Shown: positions 1,275 through 13,214, counted from the first letter of the whole stretch. The stretch: 63,661 bases of DNA, filler included, from Octopus bimaculoides (GCF_001194135.2; 5 parts of 5 records of this genome joined end to end with filler, not necessarily neighbours in it); one strand, 5' to 3'. Notes: generated by a model not told the origin, from the letters alone. Translations and numbers: made by a program.

Positions 1275-2155
1275 AGCTCTTTTCACATGGAAATATGCTG
1301 TGCTTGAGAAGACCCGGCAAGCCAAGTGAGACAATAATCCGAGGCCTCTGCCAGGGGTGTAGCCAGCCCACTTATGCGTACCTTTCCTTCATTGGACATT
1401 AAACTCCGCTTGCGAAGACCTGTTGAGGCAAATCGAAATCGAACCAAATTCGACGACTGGCACCCGTGCCAACGTCTCCTTTATTGGACACTAAACTCGG
1501 CTTGCAAAGACCTGTTGGGACAAATGAAAGCGAAATNNNNNNNNNNNNNNNNNNNNNNNNNNNNNNNNNNNNNNNNNNNNNNNNNNNNNNNNNNNNNNNN
1601 NNNNNNNNNNNNNNNNNNNNNNNNNNNNNNNNNNNNNNNNNNNNNNNNNNNNNNNNNNNNNNNNNNNNNNNNNNNNNNNNNNNNNNNNNNNNNNNNNNNN
1701 NNNNNNNNNNNNNNNNNNNNNNNNNNNNNNNNNNNNNNNNNNNNNNNNNNNNNNNNNNNNNNNNNNNNNNNNNNNNNNNNNNNNNNNCACGTAAATACCA
1801 CCATTTGAGCGTGAGCGTTACCAGCATCGCCTTCCTGGCACATAAAAAGTCATTCGAGCGAGGTCGTTGCCAGTGCTGCTGGACTGGCTCCTGTGCAGGT
1901 GGTGACATGTAAAATACACCATTTTGAACGTGGCCGTTGCCAGTACCGTGTGACTGGCCTTCATGCCGGTGTCATGTAAAAGCACCCACTACACTCTCGG
2001 AGTGGTTGGCGTTAGGAAGGGCATCCAGCTGTAGAAACTCTGCCAGATAAGATTGGAGCCTGGTGTAGCCATCTGGTTCGCCAGTCCTCAGTCAAATCGT
2101 CCAACCCATGCTAGCATGGAAAGCAGACGTTAAACGATGATGATGATGATGATGC
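1275..2155 (+). mobile_element. 3' end of an RTE-type LINE or related SINE (family B), contains N gap
   Basis: Encodes WKYAVLEKTRQAK*, then the shared core ggttggcgttaggaagggcatccagc, ending ccaacccatgctagcatggaaagcagacgttaaac(gat)n. Many copies occur in the window. Confidence 0.7.
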
Positions 2156-2278: not shown

Positions 2279-2374
2279 ATGGAAATCCCTGAGGAGATTG
2301 CTGATAGGCTGGAGAAAGAAGTCAATGCTAAACACTTGCTGAGCGAACTAAAAGGTTTAACTGACATAGCTCGT
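2279..2374 (+). CDS. MAVS: MAVS-like adaptor, coding exon 1 (CARD N-terminal part, MEIPEEIADRLEKEVNAKHLLSELKGLTDIAR)
   Basis: Acceptor ttccttttag at 2266, strong aaatcATGG start, donor CGT|GTAAGT at 2375, phase 0. Joins the next exon in frame. Confidence 0.8.
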
Positions 2375-2921
2375 GTAAGTCTCTCTTTCTCTCTCTTTCT
2401 CCCTCTCTCTCTCTCTCTCTCTTTCTCCCTCTCTCCCCTCTCTCTCTCTCTCTCTCGCTTTCTCCCCCTCTCTCTCTCTCTCCCTNNNNNNNNNNNNNNN
2501 NNNNNNNNNNNNNNNNNNNNNNNNNNNNNNNNNNNNNNNNNNNNNNNNNNNNNNNNNNNNNNNNNNNNNNNNNNNNNNNNNNNNNNNNNNNNNNNNNNNN
2601 NNNNNNNNNNNNNNNNNNNNNNNNNNNNNNNNNNNNNNNNNNNNNNNNNNNNNNNNNNNNNNNNNNNNNNNNNNNNNNNNNNNNNNNNNNNNNNNNNNNN
2701 NNNNNNNNNNNNNNNNNNNNNNNNNNNNNNNNNNNNNNNNNNNNNNNNNNNNNNNNNNNNNNNNNNNNNNNNNNNNNNNNNNNNNNNNNNNNNNNNNNNN
2801 CTTTCTCCCCCTCTCTCTTCTAACTGTGTTATTAACTATATCTCTGCCATTGATATTTGTTGTTATTTGTATTTATTCTTCGCTCTCTTCTGAAATAACA
2901 GACCTAAAATACGTCAGTGAT

Positions 2922-3115
2922 TTACTGTCTGTTTTCCATGCTGGCATGGGTTGGAATGGTTTGACAGGAGCTGGAAAGGCCATGGGCTACACCAGGTTTT
3001 GGCATGCTTTCTACAATTGGCTGCCCATCCTCACACCAATCATTTTACAGAGTGTATTGAGTGCTTTTTACATGGCATCATCAATGCTTTGTATGTGGCA
3101 CCAGGACAGTGGTTT
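2922..3115 (-). mobile_element. Family B (RTE-related) repeat copy
   Basis: Reverse complement of the family B tail (tccatgctggcatgggttgga...ggctgcccatcctcacaccaa). Confidence 0.6.
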
Positions 3116-3117
3116 TT

Positions 3118-3336
3118 GAATTCAATGCTATACTTGTTGCCAACCCTCACCTTACTGACAGCATTCCTGTACATGGCTTGTACAGGTCTCACCAACCACT
3201 TATCTATCCCTAGTTTCTGCATTGATCACCAGATAAGGGAGTAGGGGACCCTGTCAAAGGCTTTCTCTATGTCAATGAAAGAGGTTTATTCTCCCCCACT
3301 GATGCTATATTTCTGGTAAGGCAGCTGCAGGAGAGG
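3118..3336 (-). mobile_element. RTE LINE RT fragment with an inverted 5' piece
   Basis: Minus strand reads FIDIEKAFDRVPYSLIW*SMQKLGIDKWLVRPVQAMY. The normally upstream motif TDAIFLVRQLQE lies on the + strand at 3296-3336. Confidence 0.7.
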
Positions 3337-3364
3337 CTTATTAGTGTCTCTCTAATGTTGGTGT

Positions 3365-3520
3365 AATTTCAAGGGAGCAGGCGAGTCGATTACAATGACC
3401 CCAGTACACAACTGGTACTTATTTTATCAACCCTGAAAGGACAAAAGGTAAAGTCGACCTCAGCAGCATTTGAACTCGGAATGTAAAGACAGATGAAATT
3501 TTGCTAAACATGATATTAAT
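3365..3520 (-). mobile_element. SINE family C copy
   Basis: Shared core ccccagtac..actggtacttattttatc.accc.gaaagga..aaagg.aaagtcgacctc...atttgaactc, as in the other family C copies. Confidence 0.65.
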
Positions 3521-3743
3521 ATTTTAAAATCTTAGTGAGAGGGGGATATTTGATTAAATCAACCCTGGTGCTTTACTGTTACTCATTTCGTTGAAAGGCA
3601 GCCTCAGTATAATTTGAACTCAGAACATAAAGATGGATTCATTTCATCTTGCATGATAACTATTCTACCAGCCTTCTGCCTTCTTAATAATAAAAAAACA
3701 TGTCTTTTGCTTATTTTATATTATCAGTCTTTCTTTTTCACAG

Positions 3744-3909
3744 CAGGAGATAGAACGCGAAATTGATAGACACGGCATTAATTTGGGCATGAAGGAAATT
3801 ATAAGACACTTTCCTAGATTTGACAATTGGGATTATTATTTGGTGAAAGCATTGAAATCTAGAGCCATACAGAAGAAAGCTATTGCTGAGGAATTGAGCC
3901 AATGGATTT
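3744..3909 (+). CDS. MAVS: MAVS-like adaptor, coding exon 2 (CARD C-terminal part, QEIEREIDRHGINLGMKEIIRHFPRFDNWDYYLVKALKSRAIQKKAIAEELSQWI)
   Basis: Acceptor ttctttttcacag, donor T|GTAAGT at 3910, open frame, phase 0 to 1. The pattern EI..E....G....l...f.r..NW..yLv.AL.....IAEEL resembles MAVS/RIG-I-type CARD helices 4-6. Confidence 0.8.
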
Positions 3910-4082
3910 GTAAGTATAATGCTAGGGAGGAAGGGTGAGAAGTAGGCTGTGTGCTGAAGAAGTTTCTTTTGCAACTCCACAGTTCCAGGTTCAATCCAAC
4001 TGCACTGCACTTTGGACACATGTTCATATGTATCACACAATCCAAGTTTTGTGTTATGTATTGTCAAAAGTGTGGGAAGAAT

Positions 4083-4218
4083 ATTTGCTTTCCAACCATA
4101 TGGTTCCAGGTTGTCACACTCTGAGGCAAGTGTCTTCTACTATACGCCTGGGCAGCTCAAAGACTTGTGATTGGATTTGGTAAATGGAAACTGAAAGAAG
4201 CCTGTCATATATATATGT
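4083..4218 (+). mobile_element. SINE family A, 5' half
   Basis: ccaaccatatggttcc..gcaagtgtcttctactata..ggatttggta..ggaaactgaaagaagcc matches the family A head. Confidence 0.6.
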
Positions 4219-4220
4219 AC

Positions 4221-4540
4221 ATTCTTTTATTTGACTGCGGCCATGCCGGAGTACCACCTTCGGGGGTGTTTAAGTAAAAAAAATTGAACCCAGGATTTAT
4301 TTTTTGTAAGCCTAGTACTTATTGTATTGGTCTTTTTTGCCGAACTGCTAAGTTACAGGGACAGAAACAAACCAACATCGGTTGTCAAGTGATGATGGTG
4401 GGGGACAAACACACAAATACATACATATATATATATATGCACAACAGGCTTCTTTCAATTTCCATCTACCAAATCCATTCACAAGACTAAAGTAGAAGAC
4501 ACTTACCCAAGGTGCCACACAGTGGGACTGAACCCGAAAC
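4221..4540 (-). mobile_element. SINE family A copy
   Basis: Reverse complement of family A (tttgactgcggccatg...cctagtacttatt...ccaaggtgccacacagtgggactgaaccc). Confidence 0.7.
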
Positions 4541-4819
4541 TATATATATATATATATGTATAAATAAATATATGGATGGTATTACTAAAATACCATCACG
4601 AGTGGCAAGTGAATTATCAGCCATACAGGCAAATTAATAAAATATATACATACAATATTAGATATGTACATATATACACAAGGGCACTACATGAGCCCCT
4701 ACATATCTATAATAGAAGTCAAAAATACTTCTGTGCCACTGAATAGTCACAAATCTATTACAGACATGATAGGAAAAAATATCAGTGAACAATATATGTA
4801 TATATATATATATATGCAT

Positions 4820-5197
4820 CGTCATCATCATCATTGTTTAATGTCCGCTTTTGACTGAGGACTGGGGAACCAAATGGCTACACCAGGCTCCAATCTAATT
4901 TGGCAGAGTTTCTACAGCTGGATACCCTTCCTAATGCCAACCACTCAGAGAGTGTAGTGGGTGCTTTTACATGACACTGGCATGAAGGCCAGTTAGGCGG
5001 TACTGGTAACGATTTCACTTGCCTCAACAGGTCTTTGCAAGCGGAGTTTAGTGTCCAATGAAGGAAAGGTACGAATAAGTGGGCTGGCTACATCCCTGGC
5101 AGAGGCCTTGGATTTTGGTCTTACTTGGCTTGCCGGGTCTTCTTACGCACAGCATATTTCCAAAGGTCTTAGTCACAAGTCATTGCCTCGGTGAGGC

Positions 5198-5200
<3 letters not shown>
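4820..5200 (-). mobile_element. Family B (RTE-related) repeat copy
   Basis: Reverse complement of the 1275-2155 element (gtttctacagctggatacccttcctaatgccaaccactc...gggtcttcttacgcacagcatattt). Confidence 0.7.
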
Positions 5201-5240
<40 letters not shown>

Positions 5241-5247
<7 letters not shown>

Positions 5248-5506
5248 AATAATAGCAGGATAACTACATCAAAGAATCATCACAGAAGATATAAGTCCAA
5301 AGTAATATTGGATTAGTTATATAGATTAGTTATATATAGATTATATATAGATTATAGACTAGTTATATAGATGTATAAATATATGAAACATGATTATTTA
5401 AAAAGTTTATAAAGTGCTTTATATATTTATACATCTATCTATTAATACAATATTATTTGGGACTTATATCTTCTGTGATGTAGTTTTCCTGCTCTTATTT
5501 TATAAT
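5241..5506. mobile_element. MITE with ~65-bp imperfect terminal inverted repeats
   Basis: Left arm attataaaataatagcaggataactacatc..acagaagatataagtccaaagtaatattg; the right arm reverse-complements to attataaaataagagcaggaaaactacatcacagaagatataagtcccaaataatattg. TA-rich flanks. Confidence 0.65.
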
Positions 5507-5630
5507 TTAATATATAATCGTTCTTAGTAAATGTCTAAATACTTTTAATGTTTTAGACATTTCCCTACCAAGAGTACTTACTAGAAATTCAGTATATTGT
5601 ATTCTCATTGAATATATTTGATTAATGATA

Positions 5631-5675
<45 letters not shown>

Positions 5676-5933
5676 CAAATAAGAAAATGGAGAGGATAAA
5701 CAATCGACAAACATCAGCCTGTAAACATTCAATTATATCGATTTATTAATTGGTAACAATCATATGTGTAAGTGATCCAAATAAATGAATGAAATAAATA
5801 AGTAAATAAATGTATAAATAAAAATAAACAAGTAAGAATAAATGAGGAGAGAGGGGGGTGAGAAGGGGAATGGGTTGAGTGGTGAAAATGTGTGTGTGTT
5901 CTGGCTAAATTCCTTTCTCTTCTAACATTGCAG

Positions 5934-6047
5934 GTAGAAAGAAAAAATTTCACTGTTCGCTCATTCATTTTGAATACTTCTCATGCCTAGACGAGTTAAA
6001 TGATGCTGATTTGAATCCAAACTGGAAGGATTTGGCTCATAAATTGA
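5934..6047 (+). CDS. MAVS: MAVS-like adaptor, coding exon 3 (start of death domain, ...LDELNDADLNPNWKDLAHKL)
   Basis: Acceptor ctttctcttctaacattgcag, donor A|GTAAGA at 6048, phase 1 to 1, open. NWKDLAHKL matches the death-domain W..LA..L motif. Confidence 0.78.
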
Positions 6048-6174
6048 GTAAGAATGGTTCTGTTTTTCTTCACATTCTATGATGATGGTGTTTGTTTATT
6101 GCTGAGATCAACCTCAGCTAATCTTATGAATGCATTCTAGCTTTGAACATCTTGTCTTTATTCTCATATACTGT

Positions 6175-6420
6175 ATCATCATCATCATCATCATCATCAT
6201 CATCTTCATTTAATGACTGCCTTCCATGCTGTCATGGGTTGGACAGCTTGACAGGAGCTGGCACGGCCAGGAGCCACACCAGGTTCTGTAGTCTGGGTTT
6301 TCTTTCAACAGCTGGATGCCCTTCCTAATGCCAACCCTTTTACAGGGGGTACAAAGGGTGCTTTTTTTATGTGGCACCATCACGAGTGCTTTTTCCATGA
6401 TATCTTGGCTCTCAGGCATC
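6175..6420 (-). mobile_element. Family B (RTE-related) repeat copy with (CAT)n tail
   Basis: ttccatgctgtcatgggttggacag...cagctggatgcccttcctaatgccaac. Confidence 0.65.
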
Positions 6421-6749
6421 TAGAGCTATATTATTCAATGTGTGGTATAGAGTTTCTCCGGCTACAGTATCATGTGTGTTGTTAGTCTTAGGATTGCTGG
6501 AATCATTAAACATCAAAGAAACTGTTTTGTGGTCTTTCATTTTGGCCCTTTACTATCCTCTTCATCACCATTATCTTCATCATCATCCATTCATTTTTCC
6601 CCTGTTTGTATGGTCTCCAACTTTGAGCAATACCTTACCATATTTTGTCATTTCTTTTTTGAGAAATTCTATTTTCTGAAATCAGTGTTCATCACTTCTC
6701 ATTGTCTCTGCTTCTTTGTTGGGTTGGGCATCTTGACAGGAGCACAATG

Positions 6750-7300
6750 TTCTCTCTTCTGCACAACTCATGATACCTCTTATTCACAGTTTTTCTTTCA
6801 ACTCCTTTCACATCCTCCATAGCATCCTCACCTCACTTCTTTCTGCACTTCGCATATCCTTCACAACAATTTCTTTTCTTCATCATCATCATGAACAGAA
6901 TCAGCATCACCATCATTATCTCGTTACCATCAGTCCTCATTTCCATCACCATCACCATCATCATCATCATCTGTTACAGGTTAAACAGGTCTTGATCAAT
7001 TATGTGAGAGGACCCTGGTGGTCTGACACAGTTGCTTCTTCCAGTGAGTTTCTTGGTCTTCTCATGCTGCTCTATATGTGCAGCATCCCCATCTAGGATA
7101 CAGAGACCAGATCCTCTTTCTTTAGGTTTGTTGACTTGCAAGTTACAGGATGACCTCACTAGTGCCAGTGCCACATAAAAAGCACCTGGTCCACTCTGCA
7201 AAGCGATTGGCGTTAGGAAGGGCATCCAGCCGTAGAATCCACACCAAAGCAAACACTGGAGTATGACTTGTTGGTTCTTTGTCAAACCATTCAACATGAT
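6750..7300. mobile_element. Mosaic of decayed RTE LINE 3' fragments in both orientations
   Basis: Minus-strand ELKEKL*IRGIMSCAEER and a 3' ORF tail, followed by a + strand family B core (ttggcgttaggaagggcatccagc). Confidence 0.45.
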
Positions 7301-7435
7301 GATGATGGCAGTGGTGGTGGCTTGCAAAGAATAACTCCATAGCACAAATTTCCAACATTGCAATCACTGTAGATCCATAAATTTGGTCGGAGAACACATG
7401 TTTTTACATCTTTCACCAATATAATAGTAATATCT

Positions 7436-7499
<64 letters not shown>

Positions 7500-8617
7500 N
7501 NNNNNNNNNNNNNNNNNNNNNNNNNNNNNNNNNNNNNNNNNNNNNNNNNNNNNNNNNNNNNNNNNNNNNNNNNNNNNNNNNNNNNNNNNNNNNNNNNNNN
7601 NNNNNNNNNNNNNNNNNNNNNNNNNNNNNNNNNNNNNNNNNNNNNNNNNNNNNNNNNNNNNNNNNNNNNNNNNNNNNNNNNNNNNNNNNNNNNNNNNNNN
7701 NNNNNNNNNNNNNNNNNNNNNNNNNNNNNNNNNNNNNNNNNNNNNNNNNNNNNNNNNNNNNNNNNNNNNNNNNNNNNNNNNNNNNNNNNNNNNNNNNNNN
7801 NNNNNNNNNNNNNNNNNNNNNNNNNNNNNNNNNNNNNNNNNNNNNNNNNNNNNNNNNNNNNNNNNNNNNNNNNNNNNNNNNNNNNNNNNNNNNNNNNNNN
7901 NNNNNNNNNNNNNNNNNNNNNNNNNNNNNNNNNNNNNNNNNNNNNNNNNNNNNNNNNNNNNNNNNNNNNNNNNNNNNNNNNNNNNNNNNNNNNNNNNNNN
8001 NNNNNNNNNNNNNNNNNNNNNNNNNNNNNNNNNNNNNNNNNNNNNNNNNNNNNNNNNNNNNNNNNNNNNNNNNNNNNNNNNNNNNNNNNNNNNNNNNNNN
8101 NNNNNNNNNNNNNNNNNNNNNNNNNNNNNNNNNNNNNNNNNNNNNNNNNNNNNNNNNNNNNNNNNNNNNNNNNNNNNNNNNNNNNNNNNNNNNNNNNNNN
8201 NNNNNNNNNNNNNNNNNNNNNNNNNNNNNNNNNNNNNNNNNNNNNNNNNNNNNNNNNNNNNNNNNNNNNNNNNNNNNNNNNNNNNNNNNNNNNNNNNNNN
8301 NNNNNNNNNNNNNNNNNNNNNNNNNNNNNNNNNNNNNNNNNNNNNNNNNNNNNNNTATATATATATATATATACATACTGATTTGATTTATCTTTTCCTA
8401 TGTTTCCACTATGGGTTTCTTTTCTCTCTTAAATAAATTTCCTCTCTTGCTGACAACTTAATCACAAAACCTTTGAACTAGCTGAAAATGATTGCCATTA
8501 AAGAAAAATTGATACCAATTTGTCAAACCAGTATAGTAATATTATTTTCCATACAAATATTACTTAATTTTGTCTTTGTGAATTGACTGAGTGTTATTCT
8601 TGTTTTTATATCCCTAG

Positions 8618-9381
8618 AGCTCAAAACAGAAGACATAAACAAAATAGAAAAGAATCAGAGGCTGGAAAAGAATTTTATGTACTATGTAATAGAAAAATTA
8701 GGAGAGAAAAGCCTTGACAACTTGTTGTTAGCATTGAAAGAGCTCAGACTAACTAGAATGTGTGATGAAATTGAAGAAAGGGTTGAATTCAGACAACACC
8801 CACAACAGAATCATCAAGCTCAGCCATTTGAACCACCAACAGGGACAGCTTATTCATATGATAGTTATTTTCAAGAAAACAAACTGAAGGAGGAAGAGAA
8901 AAAAGGAGTTAGTAGTAAATTAAACTCAAGTTTAACTCATGATAAACATCCAATTGAGTGTACATCGCTAAAATCTGAATCTAGGCCTTTAAATCCGATT
9001 ACAGACCAAGAAAATAAACTAAAGAAGTTTAATAATGCGGAAAAGAATGAAAATACCATTGAAAGTCACTCTAGCCCAGAGGACAATACTAGTGTGAAAG
9101 CAACAGCAATATACTCCTGTTCAGGATATGATGAACAACAGATAGAATCTGACTCTATTGACTCTCAGGATGAAGAGAATAACCTCAATATAGATGAGAG
9201 AAATTTAGATGCTTCAGCAGCTGAAGAGATGCCAGATGTGGCACCACCCAATAATGATCGTACGAATGAGAGGATCAATTCTGAGAATGGTGACGTTGCA
9301 GATATTAAAATTTGTGTAATAATTTTTTTGGGGATCTGTATTACTGGAATGTTCTTAGTACGCAAATATTTTAAACATTAA
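8618..9381 (+). CDS. MAVS: MAVS-like adaptor, last coding exon (rest of death domain, acidic Ser/Asn-rich linker, C-terminal transmembrane anchor ICVIIFLGICITGMFLV-RKYFKH*)
   Basis: Acceptor tgtttttatatccctag at 8617; phase 1 joins in frame with the 8677 ORF. Death-domain pattern L..edI..Ie......k...sldnLllALkel.l..mcdeI. Single hydrophobic C-terminal helix flanked by basic residues. Total CDS 1140 nt = 379 aa. Confidence 0.85.
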
Positions 9382-9557: not shown

Positions 9558-9963
9558 NNNNNNNNNNNNNNNNNNNNNNNNNNNNNNNNNNNNNNNNNNN
9601 NNNNNNNNNNNNNNNNNNNNNNNNNNNNNNNNNNNNNNNNNNNNNNNNNNNNNNNNNNNNNNNNNNNNNNNNNNNNNNNNNNNNNNNNNNNNNNNNNNNN
9701 NNNNNNNNNNNNNNNNNNNNNNNNNNNNNNNNNNNNNNNNNNNNNNNNNNNNNNNNNNNNNNNNNNNNNNNNNNNNNNNNNNNNNNNNNNNNNNNNNNNN
9801 NNNNNNNNNNNNNNNNNNNNNNNNNNNNNNNNNNNNNNNNNNNNNNNNNNNNNNNNNNNNNNNNNNNNNNNNNNNNNNNNNNNNNNNNNNNNNNNNNNNN
9901 NNNNNNNNNNNNNNNNNNNNNNNNNNNNNNNNNNNNNNNNNNNNNNNNNNNNNNNNNNNNNNN

Positions 9964-10273: not shown

Positions 10274-10650
10274 TGGCTATCTGGTAAGAAGTTTGCTTCC
10301 CAACCACATGGTTCCGGGTTCAGTCCCACCTTGGGTAAGTGTCATCTACTATAGCCCCAGGCCAACCAAAGCCTTGTGAATGGATTTGGTAGACAGAAAC
10401 TGAAAGAAACCCATCATATATATATATTTATGTATGTAAATGTGTGTTTGTGTTTGTCCCCCTACCATCACTTGACAACCAATGTTGGTGTTTTTAGGTC
10501 TCCATAACTTAGCGGTTCTACAAAAGAGATCAATGGAATAAGTACTAGGCTTACATAGAATAAGTCCTGGGGTTGATTTGTTCAACCAAAGGCGGTGCTC
10601 CAGCATGGCTACAGTCAAATGACTGAAACAAGTAAAAGAGTAAAAGAGTA
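10274..10650 (+). mobile_element. SINE family A, full copy
   Basis: Head tggcta..tggtaagaagtttgcttcccaaccacatggttccgggttcagtcccac; tail ggcggtgctccagcatggctacagtcaaatgactgaaacaagtaaaagagtaaaag. Confidence 0.8.
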
Positions 10651-10956: not shown

Positions 10957-11145
10957 TTATCTTTTACTTGTTTCAGTCATTTGACTGTGGCCATGCTGGA
11001 GCACTGCCTTGAAGGGTTTTTAGTTGAACAAATCAGTTCCAGGACTTTTTGCCTTTGAACTTAGTACTTATTCTGTCAGTCACTTTTGTTGAACCACTAA
11101 GTTACGGAGACGTAAACAAACCAACATCAGTTGTTAAGCAGCAGT

Positions 11146-11181
<36 letters not shown>

Positions 11182-11335
11182 ATGGGATTCTTTCAGTTTC
11201 TGTCTACCAAATCTATTCACAATGCTTTGGTTGGCCCAAGGCTATAGTAGAAGACACTTGCCCAAGGTGCCATGCAGTGGGACTGAACCCAGAACGATGT
11301 GGTTGGGAAGTAAACTTCTTACCACACAACTACAC
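10957..11335 (-). mobile_element. SINE family A, full copy inverted relative to 10274-10650
   Basis: tcttttacttgtttcagtcatttgactgtggccatgctggagcac...ccaaggtgccatgcagtgggactgaaccc...cttcttaccacac. Confidence 0.8.
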
Positions 11336-11432: not shown

Positions 11433-11900
11433 GTTTAATGTCTGTTGTCCATGCGTTAGACAGTGTGATTGAAACTGGCAAGGCTGCAGAGCTGCACCAG
11501 GCTCCAGTCTGATTTGGCACAAATTCTATGGCTGGATGCCCTTCCTAACGTCAACCTCTCTGTGAGTGTAATGGGCCATCAGCATAGGTGCCATTTGCAT
11601 GACACCAGTATCTTCCATGACTTGTGATTTTGCTCGGCTTGGTTGGTCTTCTCAAGCACGACAGAGGTCTCAGCCATTGCTTCCATGCAGTCCAACACTC
11701 GAAAAGAGCTCAGTCACTTTGCCTCTATGAGGCCCAACACTCAGAAGATACTTTTTATGTGTCGCTGGCATAGGTGCCACTTACATGACACCAGCATCAG
11801 CCATGGCTACGATTTCACTTGGCTTGACCAGTCTTCTCAAGCACAGCATATCGCCAAAGGTCTTGGTCAATAATCATTTCCTCTGTGAGGTCCAAAGTTG
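11400..11900 (-). mobile_element. Family B (RTE-related) repeat copy
   Basis: (CAT)n-cgtttaatgtc...ggctggatgcccttcctaacg...gtcttctcaagcacagcatatcgcc. Confidence 0.65.
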
Positions 11901-12779: not shown

Positions 12780-13090
12780 TAGTGTAGCATAACCGGCCCA
12801 TTTAAGAATACCTTTCAATTATTGGACAATATGCTGTGCCTGAGAGGACCTGTTGAGTCAAGTGAAATCATTGTGATGGCTGATGCCAGGCCTGCCTGAC
12901 TGGCTCCTGTGCCAGTGGCACGTAAAAAGCACCCACTGTACTCTCAGATTGGTTGGCATTAGGAAGGGCATCCAGCTGCAGAAACTCTGCCAGATCAGAT
13001 TGGGAGCCTGGTACAGCCTTCTGGCTTGCCAGTCCTCAGTCAAACTGTCCAACCCATGCCAGCATGGAAGGTGGACGTTAAATGATGATT
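12780..13090 (+). mobile_element. Family B (RTE-related) repeat copy
   Basis: atatgctgtgcctgagaggacctgttgagtcaagtg...ggttggcattaggaagggcatccagc...ccaacccatgccagcatggaag. Confidence 0.7.
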
Positions 13091-13214
13091 ATATATATTT
13101 CTCTCTCTCTCTCTNNNNNNNNNNNNNNNNNNNNNNNNNNNNNNNNNNNNNNNNNNNNTTAATTAATTAANNNNNNNNNNNNNNNNNNNNNNNNNNNNNN
13201 NNNNNNNNNNNNNN

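What the first reader, a model, noticed from the sequence alone, without database searches (positions are those of the whole stretch)
2279..9381. Hidden cephalopod MAVS-like adaptor: CARD + death domain + tail anchor
Seen: four exons with consensus splice sites and matching phases (0,1,1) give a 379-aa ORF. It has an N-terminal CARD (~aa 1-87), a death domain (~100-185), a long acidic linker and a single C-terminal TM followed by RKYFKH. Established: an RLR-type CARD plus a basic-flanked tail anchor defines MAVS, and CARD-death-TM MAVS has been reported in bivalves such as oyster. Inference: this is the octopus RIG-I/MDA5 pathway adaptor. This matters because coleoids carry very heavy A-to-I editing and a large load of repeat-derived dsRNA, so their dsRNA sensing must be tuned. 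To my knowledge it is little characterised in cephalopods; I could not check this.
Basis: partly seen in the sequence, partly recalled or inferred. Interest (0 to 1): 0.82.

Follow-up and report, generated by a model that had tools for sequence, protein, structure and literature searches.

The report
Octopus MAVS-like CARD–Death–tail-anchor adaptor gene
The window holds a real four-exon Octopus bimaculoides gene, already in RefSeq but unnamed, for a membrane-anchored signalling adaptor built like the antiviral protein MAVS of oysters and scallops. It evolves unusually fast, and its upstream RNA sensor in octopus is unclear.

Summary
Exons 2279-2374, 3744-3909, 5934-6047 and 8618-9381 (+ strand) have GT/AG borders and phases 0/1/1, and give a 379-aa ORF. 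It is identical to RefSeq XP_014782561 (O. bimaculoides LOC106878001 isoform X1, "uncharacterized protein"), so the gene is unnamed, not hidden. Both assembly gaps lie in introns. The gapless O. sinensis ortholog has the same four exons, and the CARD and Death profiles run colinearly across the junctions.

Domains:
- An RLR/MAVS-type CARD. Pfam CARD_2 scores 25.6 bits, just under the 28.2 cutoff; the ortholog passes. The best single-domain PDB match is the MAVS CARD. No Apaf, caspase or NOD CARD matches.
- A Death domain (27.6 bits, passes).
- A disordered acidic linker.
- A single C-terminal TM helix followed by RKYFKH.

An exhaustive HMMER search found few relatives: Argonauta, scallop CARD-Death-TM proteins and fish MAVS. 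This is the architecture of functionally studied oyster and scallop MAVS.

Two caveats:
- dN/dS against O. sinensis is about 1.4, yet the ORF is maintained.
- The only RLR reported for O. bimaculoides is classed as CARD-less (V2).

Verdict: a new cephalopod member of the molluscan MAVS kind. Its role as an RLR adaptor is inferred, not shown.

The parts
2279..2374 (+). Coding exon 1 (aa 1-32, first part of the CARD). ATG at 2279, in-frame TAA upstream at 2270-2272, donor GTAAGT at 2375.
   Evidence: Identical to the RefSeq protein. O. sinensis exon 1 has the same 96-nt length.
2375..3743 (+). Intron 1 (phase 0). It contains a (TC)n microsatellite at 2380-2482 and the assembly gap 2486-2800; TC-rich sequence resumes at 2801.
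   Evidence: In O. sinensis the two gap flanks are adjacent (window 2428 aligns to L004 10150, and window 2811 to L004 10141), so no exon is hidden there.
3744..3909 (+). Coding exon 2 (aa 33-88, rest of the CARD, including the invariant D59-N60-W61). The tandem cagCAG acceptor at 3741-3746 gives isoforms X1 (379 aa) and X2 (378 aa, lacking Q33).
   Evidence: CARD_2 covers aa 7-86. W61 aligns with human MAVS W56.
5934..6047 (+). Coding exon 3 (aa 88-126): inter-domain segment and first helices of the Death domain.
   Evidence: Pfam Death covers aa 114-179. AF2 helices H104-110 and H118-124.
6048..8617 (+). Intron 3 (phase 1). The assembly gap 7500-8355 is flanked by (TC)n/(TA)n before it and (TA)n after it. 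The intron also carries interspersed repeats.
   Evidence: The O. sinensis equivalent (L004 18173-19227) is 1055 nt of AT-rich sequence with a short repeat match, and lies between exons 3 and 4 as mapped from the RefSeq protein.
8618..8796 (+). Exon 4, first part (aa 126-185): remainder of the Death domain.
   Evidence: Death, 27.6 bits, above the 22.6 cutoff. (p75NTR, NRADD and IRAK-M death domains, E 1e-4 to 3e-4). (helices 129-137, 143-153, 158-167, 171-185).
8797..9303 (+). Exon 4, middle (aa 186-354): acidic linker predicted to be disordered. Short islands are conserved from Octopus to Argonauta, for example PIECT at 8950-8964, which fits Px[Q/E]x[T/S].
   Evidence: pLDDT below 50 over most of aa 182-347. 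(33 D/E against 16 K/R; motif scan). (conserved islands PI[EQ]C[TS], DQxxKLxKxNN, EDNxxxKAT).
9304..9360 (+). The single transmembrane helix (aa 355-373, IKICVIIFLGICITGMFLV).
   Evidence: the only 19-aa window with mean Kyte-Doolittle above 1.6; value 2.64. (helix 352-377). The same terminal position is seen in O. sinensis, O. vulgaris, Argonauta, P0009, P0008 and Mizuhopecten.
9361..9381 (+). Six-residue basic tail RKYFKH and the TAA stop (9379-9381). Together with the TM helix this has the form of a tail anchor.
   Evidence: There is a weak, non-significant resemblance to the BAK tail anchor (E 1.2).

Best explanation
This is the O. bimaculoides member of the molluscan-type MAVS family. The protein is a tail-anchored death-fold adaptor with four parts: an N-terminal RLR/MAVS-class CARD (exons 1-2), a Death domain (exons 3-4), a disordered acidic linker carrying short conserved motifs, and a C-terminal TM helix with a basic tail.

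The likely mechanism is inferred by homology with oyster and scallop MAVS and with vertebrate MAVS. The tail anchor should place the protein on an organelle membrane (mitochondria or peroxisomes) facing the cytosol. An upstream CARD-bearing sensor should nucleate CARD-CARD oligomerisation. The oligomer should then recruit TRAF-type and TBK1/IKK-type effectors through the linker, and possibly through the Death domain, to activate NF-kB and IRF transcription.

What is shown here: the gene structure, the domain classes, homology to scallop CARD-Death-TM proteins and to fish MAVS, and rapid evolution with a maintained ORF.

What is inferred: the localisation, polymerisation, the partners and the antiviral role.
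For: - Gene model: verified and identical to RefSeq.
- Domains by Pfam: CARD_2 25.6 bits and Death 27.6 bits in O. bimaculoides. The O. sinensis ortholog passes both cutoffs at 29.3 and 24.4 bits.
- CARD class: the CARD-only profile against PDB scores the MAVS CARD as the best single domain (31.8 bits, E 1e-6), then RIG-I CARD2 (26.4) and MDA5 CARD2 (18.6). No other CARD class appears. The invariant W61 aligns with human MAVS W56.
- Relatives: the exhaustive HMMER search of 1.84e9 proteins gave only nine hits at E<1e-3. They include Argonauta hians (CARD region, Death, TM), a scallop-like CARD_2+Death+TM protein matched over aa 11-178 (E 1.6e-6), Pecten maximus LOC117340036 and Mugil cephalus MAVS.
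- Structure: the AF2 model of aa 1-187 (pLDDT 77) has two six-helix bundles. The top Foldseek hits are RIG-I and MDA5 2CARD, MAVS CARD and the p75NTR death domain.
- Tail anchor: its position and short, mostly basic tail are conserved in all the cephalopod relatives and in two of the three scallop-type proteins.
- Precedent: oyster CgMAVS and scallop CfMAVS have exactly CARD+Death+TM. CgMAVS binds RIG-I CARDs and TRAF6, and CfMAVS binds a TBK1/IKKe homolog (PMC5557890; PMC9879056).
- ORF maintenance: the ORF is kept despite 17% nucleotide divergence (23 of 20000 random-substitution simulations stay open), and all indels are in frame.
Against: - CARD_2 is below Pfam's cutoff in this species. 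In Argonauta, Pfam reports no CARD_2 hit and Death falls just under its cutoff.
- All Foldseek E-values are above 0.08.
- The sequences of the characterised CgMAVS (KY630189) and CfMAVS (OM069740) were not available, so reciprocal best-hit orthology was not tested. Oyster MAVS was not retrieved by any search.
- The only RLR catalogued in O. bimaculoides is classed as CARD-less V2. No other cephalopod CARD_2 protein was found, although that search was limited by its word index.
- dN/dS is about 1.4, with differences spread evenly over codon positions (67/72/52). This is also what relaxed constraint would give.
Confidence: 0.6

Rival explanations
1. A MAVS-derived adaptor that no longer serves RLRs. 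The membrane-anchored CARD-Death protein is driven by some other CARD- or Death-domain partner (a CARD-only protein, an NLR-like sensor, or IRAK/Pelle/TNFR-type death-domain proteins) and feeds NF-kB or cell-death signalling.
For: - The single O. bimaculoides RLR is classed V2, meaning no CARD (PMC8998645 Table S4).
- Heterobranch gastropods have CARD-less RLRs plus separate CARD-only proteins (P0011).
- The Death domain resembles those of p75NTR, NRADD and IRAK-M.
- Fast evolution fits a change of partners.
Against: - The CARD is specifically of the RLR/MAVS class.
- The same architecture in oyster does bind RIG-I CARDs.
- The V2 call for ObiRLR rests on automated domain detection in a fragmented assembly. 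A divergent or unannotated N-terminal CARD is plausible, since the CARD of this very protein falls under Pfam's cutoff.
Confidence: 0.22
2. A gene under relaxed constraint, on its way to loss (as MAVS is reported lost in gastropods). It would still be open by chance or by recent history, with no conserved function.
For: - dN/dS is 1.39 (bootstrap 95% CI 0.97-2.16), and differences are nearly equal at the three codon positions.
- Exons are less conserved (83%) than most of the aligned intron segments (86-93%).
- The O. sinensis genome sequence of exon 3 is 1 nt short of the frame needed for its RefSeq protein.
- Aplysia and abalone are reported to lack MAVS.
Against: - The ORF stays open in only 0.1% of neutral simulations, and all indels are in frame.
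- The CARD region, Death domain and tail anchor are retained out to Argonauta at about 33% identity, with invariant core residues such as DNW.
- O. vulgaris has an intact frame at the O. sinensis frameshift position.
Confidence: 0.1
3. An artefactual or incomplete gene model: the assembly gaps hide further coding exons, or the exons do not belong together.
For: Two gaps of estimated length lie inside the gene (2486-2800 and 7500-8355). The newer assembly GCA_001194135.2 still carries them.
Against: - The gapless O. sinensis locus has the same four exons.
- The domain profiles are colinear across the junctions.
- The ortholog alignment shows no indel at the exon 2/3 or 3/4 junction, and at the exon 1/2 junction only the one-residue (Q33) difference in isoform X2 from the tandem acceptor.
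- The gaps are flanked by microsatellites.
Confidence: 0.03

Closest known systems
Bivalve MAVS: Crassostrea gigas CgMAVS (KY630189; PMC5557890) and Chlamys farreri CfMAVS (OM069740; PMC9879056)
   Same: The domain order is identical: N-terminal CARD, Death domain in place of the vertebrate proline-rich region, long linker, C-terminal TM. Scallop relatives with this architecture (Pecten maximus LOC117340036, Mizuhopecten LOC110448678, P0008) are the best non-cephalopod matches, aligned over both CARD and Death domains.
   Different: Identity is only about 23-28%. The oyster protein itself was not retrieved. The octopus linker is acidic and rich in Asn/Gln and Ser/Thr. No function has been tested in any cephalopod. 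Bivalves have CARD-bearing (V1/C type) RLRs, whereas the octopus RLR is listed as V2.
Vertebrate MAVS (IPS-1/VISA/Cardif), e.g. human MAVS CARD structures 3J6J, 2VGQ and 4P4H
   Same: Both have a single N-terminal CARD of the RLR/MAVS class. It is the best single-domain PDB match (31.8 bits), and the conserved Trp aligns with W56. Both have a long disordered middle and a C-terminal tail anchor with a basic end. Fish MAVS is a significant hit in the exhaustive search (E 7.6e-4).
   Different: A Death domain replaces the proline-rich region. No TRAF6-type PxExx[aromatic/acidic] motif and no pLxIS motif is present in the linker. Only one Px[Q/E]x[T/S] site (PIECT) is present.
RIG-I/MDA5 tandem CARDs (e.g. 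6BZH, 4P4H, 7DNI)
   Same: The same CARD_2 family. The two-domain model of aa 1-187 has RIG-I and MDA5 2CARD as its top Foldseek hits, and RIG-I CARD2 scores 26.4 bits.
   Different: There is no helicase or C-terminal RNA-binding domain. The second domain is a Death domain, not a CARD. The protein is membrane-anchored.

Membership tests
MAVS (molluscan CARD-Death-TM type) | A single N-terminal CARD of the RLR/MAVS class (Pfam CARD_2, PF16739), not the caspase/Apaf/NOD class | tested here: met
   CARD_2 covers aa 7-86 at 25.6 bits, under the 28.2 cutoff in this species; the O. sinensis ortholog scores 29.3 and passes. PF00619 was not reported. Against PDB, the profile hits only MAVS, RIG-I and MDA5 CARDs, and the MAVS CARD is the best single domain at 31.8 bits.
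MAVS (molluscan CARD-Death-TM type) | A Death domain directly after the CARD | tested here: met
   Pfam Death covers aa 114-179 at 27.6 bits, above the 22.6 cutoff. PDB death domains match at E 1e-4 to 3e-4. The AF2 model shows a six-helix bundle at aa 104-185.
MAVS (any) | A single C-terminal transmembrane tail anchor with a short basic tail and no signal peptide or other TM segment | tested here: met
   The only hydrophobic window is aa 355-373, followed by RKYFKH. The position is conserved in the orthologs. This is in silico only.
MAVS (any) | A long disordered linker bearing TRAF-binding motifs | tested here: inconclusive
   Disorder is predicted (pLDDT below 50 over most of aa 182-347). 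One Px[Q/E]x[T/S] site, PIECT at aa 237-241, is conserved as PIQCS in Argonauta. No TRAF6 PxExx[aromatic/acidic] motif lies in the linker. About 0.1 such Px[Q/E]x[T/S] sites would be expected by chance (my estimate).
MAVS (any) | Conserved CARD core Trp (human W56), which from my own knowledge of the MAVS filament literature is needed for filament formation | tested here: met
   W61, within the invariant D-N-W, aligns with W56 of human MAVS (3J6J residues 21-88).
MAVS (molluscan) | Reciprocal best-hit or phylogenetic orthology with the functionally characterised CgMAVS and CfMAVS | tested here: inconclusive
   The forward search hits scallop CARD-Death-TM proteins and fish MAVS.
MAVS (any) | A CARD-bearing RLR partner encoded in the same genome | not tested
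   The literature lists a single RLR, ObiRLR XP_014769581.1, classed as V2, the LGP2-like type without CARDs (PMC8998645). I could not retrieve its sequence. A search with a slug 3xCARD_2 protein found no cephalopod hit, but that search is limited by its word index.
MAVS (any) | Organelle (mitochondria/peroxisome) localisation, CARD filament formation, and activation of NF-kB/IRF | not testable with these tools
   These need experiments.
RIG-I-like receptors | DExD/H helicase plus RIG-I C-terminal domain | tested here: not met
   Pfam finds no hit other than CARD_2 and Death at E up to 10.

The most novel reading that the evidence does not exclude
Octopods keep a rapidly, perhaps adaptively, evolving MAVS-type adaptor even though their only RLR lacks CARDs. 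In that case the adaptor would be triggered by a sensor not yet recognised (a split or highly divergent CARD module, or a non-RLR sensor). That would be a rewired cytosolic RNA-sensing pathway in the animal lineage with the heaviest A-to-I editing.
Probability: 0.2. Interest if true: 0.7.

Novelty: new member of a known kind. Interest (0 to 1): 0.5.

Why it matters
MAVS has been characterised functionally in bivalves and is reported missing from the gastropods studied (Aplysia, abalone). In the searchable literature I found no paper that identifies it in a cephalopod.

Naming LOC106878001 and its orthologs in O. sinensis, O. vulgaris and Argonauta as molluscan-type MAVS fills that gap in the phylogenetic map. 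It also gives cephalopod immunology a concrete handle on cytosolic RNA sensing.

Two features make it more than a routine annotation:
- The gene evolves at dN/dS of 1 or more while keeping its ORF. That pattern fits a host-virus arms race, which from my own knowledge has been described for primate MAVS.
- The reported octopus RLR is CARD-less. Either the sensor annotation is incomplete or the pathway is wired differently.

Both questions can be tested directly. The link to RNA editing remains speculative.

Tried and rejected
- **Single-sequence phmmer against PDB.** This gave only weak hits: an ankyrin death domain at E 1.1 and the BAK tail anchor at E 1.2. The profile searches were needed.
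- **AF2 on the full length with three sequences.** The model was poor (pLDDT 52). I redid it on aa 1-187 with seven sequences (pLDDT 77).
- **Foldseek against PDB.** All E-values were above 0.08, so it ranks folds qualitatively but is not significant evidence.
- **Word-indexed profile search with A3.** It reached only scallop proteins and unnamed transcript contigs. It did not reach oyster MAVS, so no source-named MAVS came out of it.
- **Third homolog search, with the slug 3xCARD protein P0011.** I was looking for a cephalopod CARD_2 partner. Only sacoglossan sea-slug hits came back, so the result is uninformative.
- **The look-up of encoding contigs for isoform X2.** Nothing was on record. 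Isoform X1 gave the locus, but that assembly carries the same gaps, so the newer assembly could not settle the gap question. O. sinensis did.
- **Brute-force GT-AG reconstruction of the O. sinensis CDS.** It failed because the genome is 1 nt short in exon 3.
- **Rfam scan of the window.** No matches.
- **ORF list.** No other credible coding ORF on either strand.
- **Reading the Death domain as a degenerate second CARD (an RLR-like 2CARD).** Rejected: Pfam and the PDB profile hits for that segment are death domains only.

Full report
**1. Observation**

The four exons are 2279-2374 (96 nt), 3744-3909 (166 nt), 5934-6047 (114 nt) and 8618-9381 (764 nt). All acceptors end in AG and all donors are GTAAG. 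The intron phases are 0, 1 and 1. The joined CDS is 1140 nt and gives 379 aa. An in-frame TAA at 2270-2272 lies just upstream of the ATG.

The protein is identical to RefSeq XP_014782561.1, LOC106878001 isoform X1 of Octopus bimaculoides. NCBI calls it "uncharacterized protein" and UniProt (A0A0L8GCF5) calls it "Death domain-containing protein". Isoform X2 (378 aa) lacks Q33 because the exon 2 acceptor is a tandem cagCAG.

The window is part of GCA_001194135.2 CM046614.1. So the gene is annotated but unnamed. It is not hidden.

**2. The gaps**

Both gaps inside the finding lie in introns: 2486-2800 in intron 1 and 7500-8355 in intron 3. Both are flanked by microsatellites. Gap 1 has TC-rich sequence on both sides. 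Gap 2 has (TC)n then (TA)n before it and (TA)n after it. The chromosome-level assembly still has both gaps, so I used the gapless O. sinensis locus L004.

The O. sinensis ortholog has the same four coding exons with the same borders. The flanks of gap 1 are adjacent in O. sinensis. The gap 2 equivalent is 1055 nt of AT-rich sequence with a short repeat match.

The Pfam CARD_2 and Death models also align colinearly across the exon 1/2 and exon 3/4 junctions. The ortholog alignment has no indel at the exon 2/3 or 3/4 junction, and at the exon 1/2 junction only the Q33 difference in isoform X2 from the tandem acceptor. I conclude that no coding exon is hidden in the gaps.

**3. Domains**

Pfam gives two hits:
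- Death, aa 114-179, 27.6 bits, above the 22.6 cutoff.
- CARD_2 (PF16739, the RIG-I/MDA5/MAVS CARD family), aa 7-86, 25.6 bits, just under the 28.2 cutoff.

The O. sinensis ortholog passes both cutoffs. The general CARD family PF00619 was not reported.

A profile of cephalopod and scallop sequences searched against all PDB chains hit, for the N-terminal domain, only RIG-I, MDA5 and MAVS CARDs. For the second domain it hit only death domains (p75NTR, NRADD, IRAK-M, RIPK1, Pelle and others).

With a CARD-only profile, the single-domain scores were:

| PDB domain | Bits |
|---|---|
| MAVS CARD (human 3J6J residues 21-88; horse 4O9L) | 31.8 (E 1e-6) |
| RIG-I CARD2 | 26.4 |
| MDA5 CARD2 | 18.6 |

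The invariant D59-N60-W61 places W61 opposite human MAVS W56.

AF2 on aa 1-187 (pLDDT 77) gives two six-helix bundles. Foldseek ranks RIG-I and MDA5 2CARD, MAVS CARD and the p75NTR death domain on top, but with non-significant E-values.

The full-length model predicts no structure over most of aa 182-347 and a terminal helix at 352-377. The only hydrophobic window is aa 355-373, followed by RKYFKH. The linker is acidic, with 33 D/E against 16 K/R.

**4. Relatives**

The family is small and divergent. An exhaustive HMMER search of 1.84 billion representative proteins with the aa 1-187 profile gave nine hits at E<1e-3:

| Hit | Source | Features |
|---|---|---|
| P0001 | O. bimaculoides | The query gene itself (isoform X2) |
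| P0006 | Argonauta hians, 526 aa | CARD region, Death, TM; E 2.6e-24 |
| P0007 | Unidentified species (Logan contig) | 77-aa fragment matching the exon 2 region |
| P0008 | Scallop-like transcript | CARD_2+Death+TM; matched over aa 11-178; E 1.6e-6 |
| P0009 | Unknown species | CARD_2 + TM, with no detectable Death domain |
| P0012 | Pecten maximus LOC117340036 | CARD_2+Death |
| P0011 | Sea slug (Plakobranchus) | 3xCARD_2 protein |
| P0010 | Amphioxus | Death-domain protein |
| P0013 | Mugil cephalus | Named MAVS; E 7.6e-4 |

Mizuhopecten LOC110448678 (Death + TM) was added by the profile search. The terminal TM is present in all the cephalopod relatives and in two of the three scallop-type proteins, followed by a short, mostly basic tail.

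The literature shows that oyster CgMAVS and scallop CfMAVS have exactly this CARD-Death-TM layout. CgMAVS binds RIG-I CARDs and TRAF6, self-associates through its TM domain, and protects against OsHV-1. CfMAVS binds a TBK1/IKKe homolog (PMC5557890; PMC9879056). Aplysia and abalone are reported to lack MAVS. I found no paper that identifies MAVS in a cephalopod.

**5.

(a) The gene evolves very fast.
- Against O. sinensis, dN is 0.20 and dS is 0.15, so dN/dS is 1.39 (bootstrap 95% CI 0.97-2.16).
- The differences are spread 67/72/52 over the three codon positions.
- Exons (83% nucleotide identity) are less conserved than most of the aligned intron segments (86-93%).
- Yet the frame stays open in only 23 of 20000 random-substitution simulations, and all indels are in frame.
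- The architecture and core residues persist out to Argonauta.

The simplest reading is a maintained gene under diversifying selection. Relaxed constraint cannot be fully excluded. The O. sinensis genome sequence is also 1 nt short in exon 3 relative to its RefSeq protein.

(b) The only RLR catalogued for O. bimaculoides (XP_014769581.1) is classed as V2, the LGP2-like type without CARDs (PMC8998645). I could not retrieve that protein to check it. A last homolog search for cephalopod CARD_2 proteins was uninformative. The upstream partner of this CARD is therefore an open question.

**6. Mechanism**

Shown here: the gene, the domain classes, the homology, the form of the tail anchor and the evolutionary rate.

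Inferred by homology: the protein is anchored on an organelle membrane, CARD-CARD nucleation by a sensor drives oligomerisation, and TRAF and TBK1-type effectors are recruited.

The linker has short islands conserved from Octopus to Argonauta:
- PI[EQ]C[TS] at aa 237-241, window 8950-8964.
- DQxxKLxKxNN at aa 255-265.
- EDNxxxKAT at aa 280-288.

The first island fits the TRAF2/3-type Px[Q/E]x[T/S] consensus. From my own knowledge, human MAVS uses PVQET. This is a lead, not evidence. No TRAF6-type motif and no pLxIS motif is present in the linker.

**7. Verdict**

This is a cephalopod member of the known molluscan MAVS kind, already present as an unnamed RefSeq model. Its role as "the RLR adaptor" is inferred. 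It is complicated by a reportedly CARD-less RLR and by a rate of protein evolution at or above neutral.

Interest is moderate. The finding fills a phylogenetic gap and raises two directly testable questions. The proposed link to A-to-I editing is untested speculation.

Noticed in passing
window 3741-3746: The exon 2 acceptor is a tandem (NAGNAG-type) cagCAG. It explains RefSeq isoforms X1 (379 aa, with Q33) and X2 (378 aa).
   Followed up: yes
L004 15869-15981 (O. sinensis exon 3): The genome sequence is 113 nt (GTAAAAGAAAGG). The RefSeq protein XP_029645019 needs 114 nt (one more A). Read as is, the frame shifts and hits stops. O. vulgaris has an intact frame (CNKKGFD). This is either an assembly indel or a real lesion.
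   Followed up: partly
window 2279-9381 vs L004 10001-20277: Coding exons are less conserved between O. bimaculoides and O. sinensis (83% nucleotide identity, 63-66% protein identity) than most of the aligned intron segments (86-93%). dN/dS is 1.39.
   Followed up: yes
window 1978-2144 and 12925-13092; 4125-4216 and 10334-10425; 4269-4543 and 11018-11298; 4877-4961 and 11491-11575: Several families of interspersed repeats (72-91% identical copies, SINE-like) lie in the introns and flanks of the gene. Other pieces look, on reading, like copies in opposite orientation (for example 4820-5160 against 1290-1530). No Rfam or tRNA-type match was found.
   Followed up: partly
window 1537-1787, 2486-2800, 7500-8355, 9558-9963: Three of the four internal assembly gaps are bordered by (TC)n or (TA)n microsatellites, often the same motif on both sides. 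They are therefore probably unresolved simple repeats rather than missing unique sequence. The fourth gap, 1537-1787, sits inside an interspersed repeat.
   Followed up: partly
L001 151-1245 and L002 145-1239 (Logan SRR25158154, SRR19578107): Transcript-like 1.36-kb contigs from an unidentified species encode a 364-aa relative (P0009) with CARD_2 and a C-terminal TM plus basic tail. The Death domain is partly deleted and undetectable. This may be a Death-less variant of the family.
   Followed up: partly
P0011 (Plakobranchus ocellatus GFO40012.1), P0027, P0028: Sacoglossan sea slugs encode helicase-less proteins made of one to three RLR-type CARDs. One is mis-named SETMAR. This echoes the CARD-only 'MDA5-like' gene reported in Aplysia, which lacks MAVS.
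   Followed up: no
P0013 (Mugil cephalus XP_047467311.1): The fish protein named MAVS is 979 aa and looks like two complete CARD...TM units in tandem. This is probably a fused gene model of two adjacent MAVS copies.
   Followed up: no
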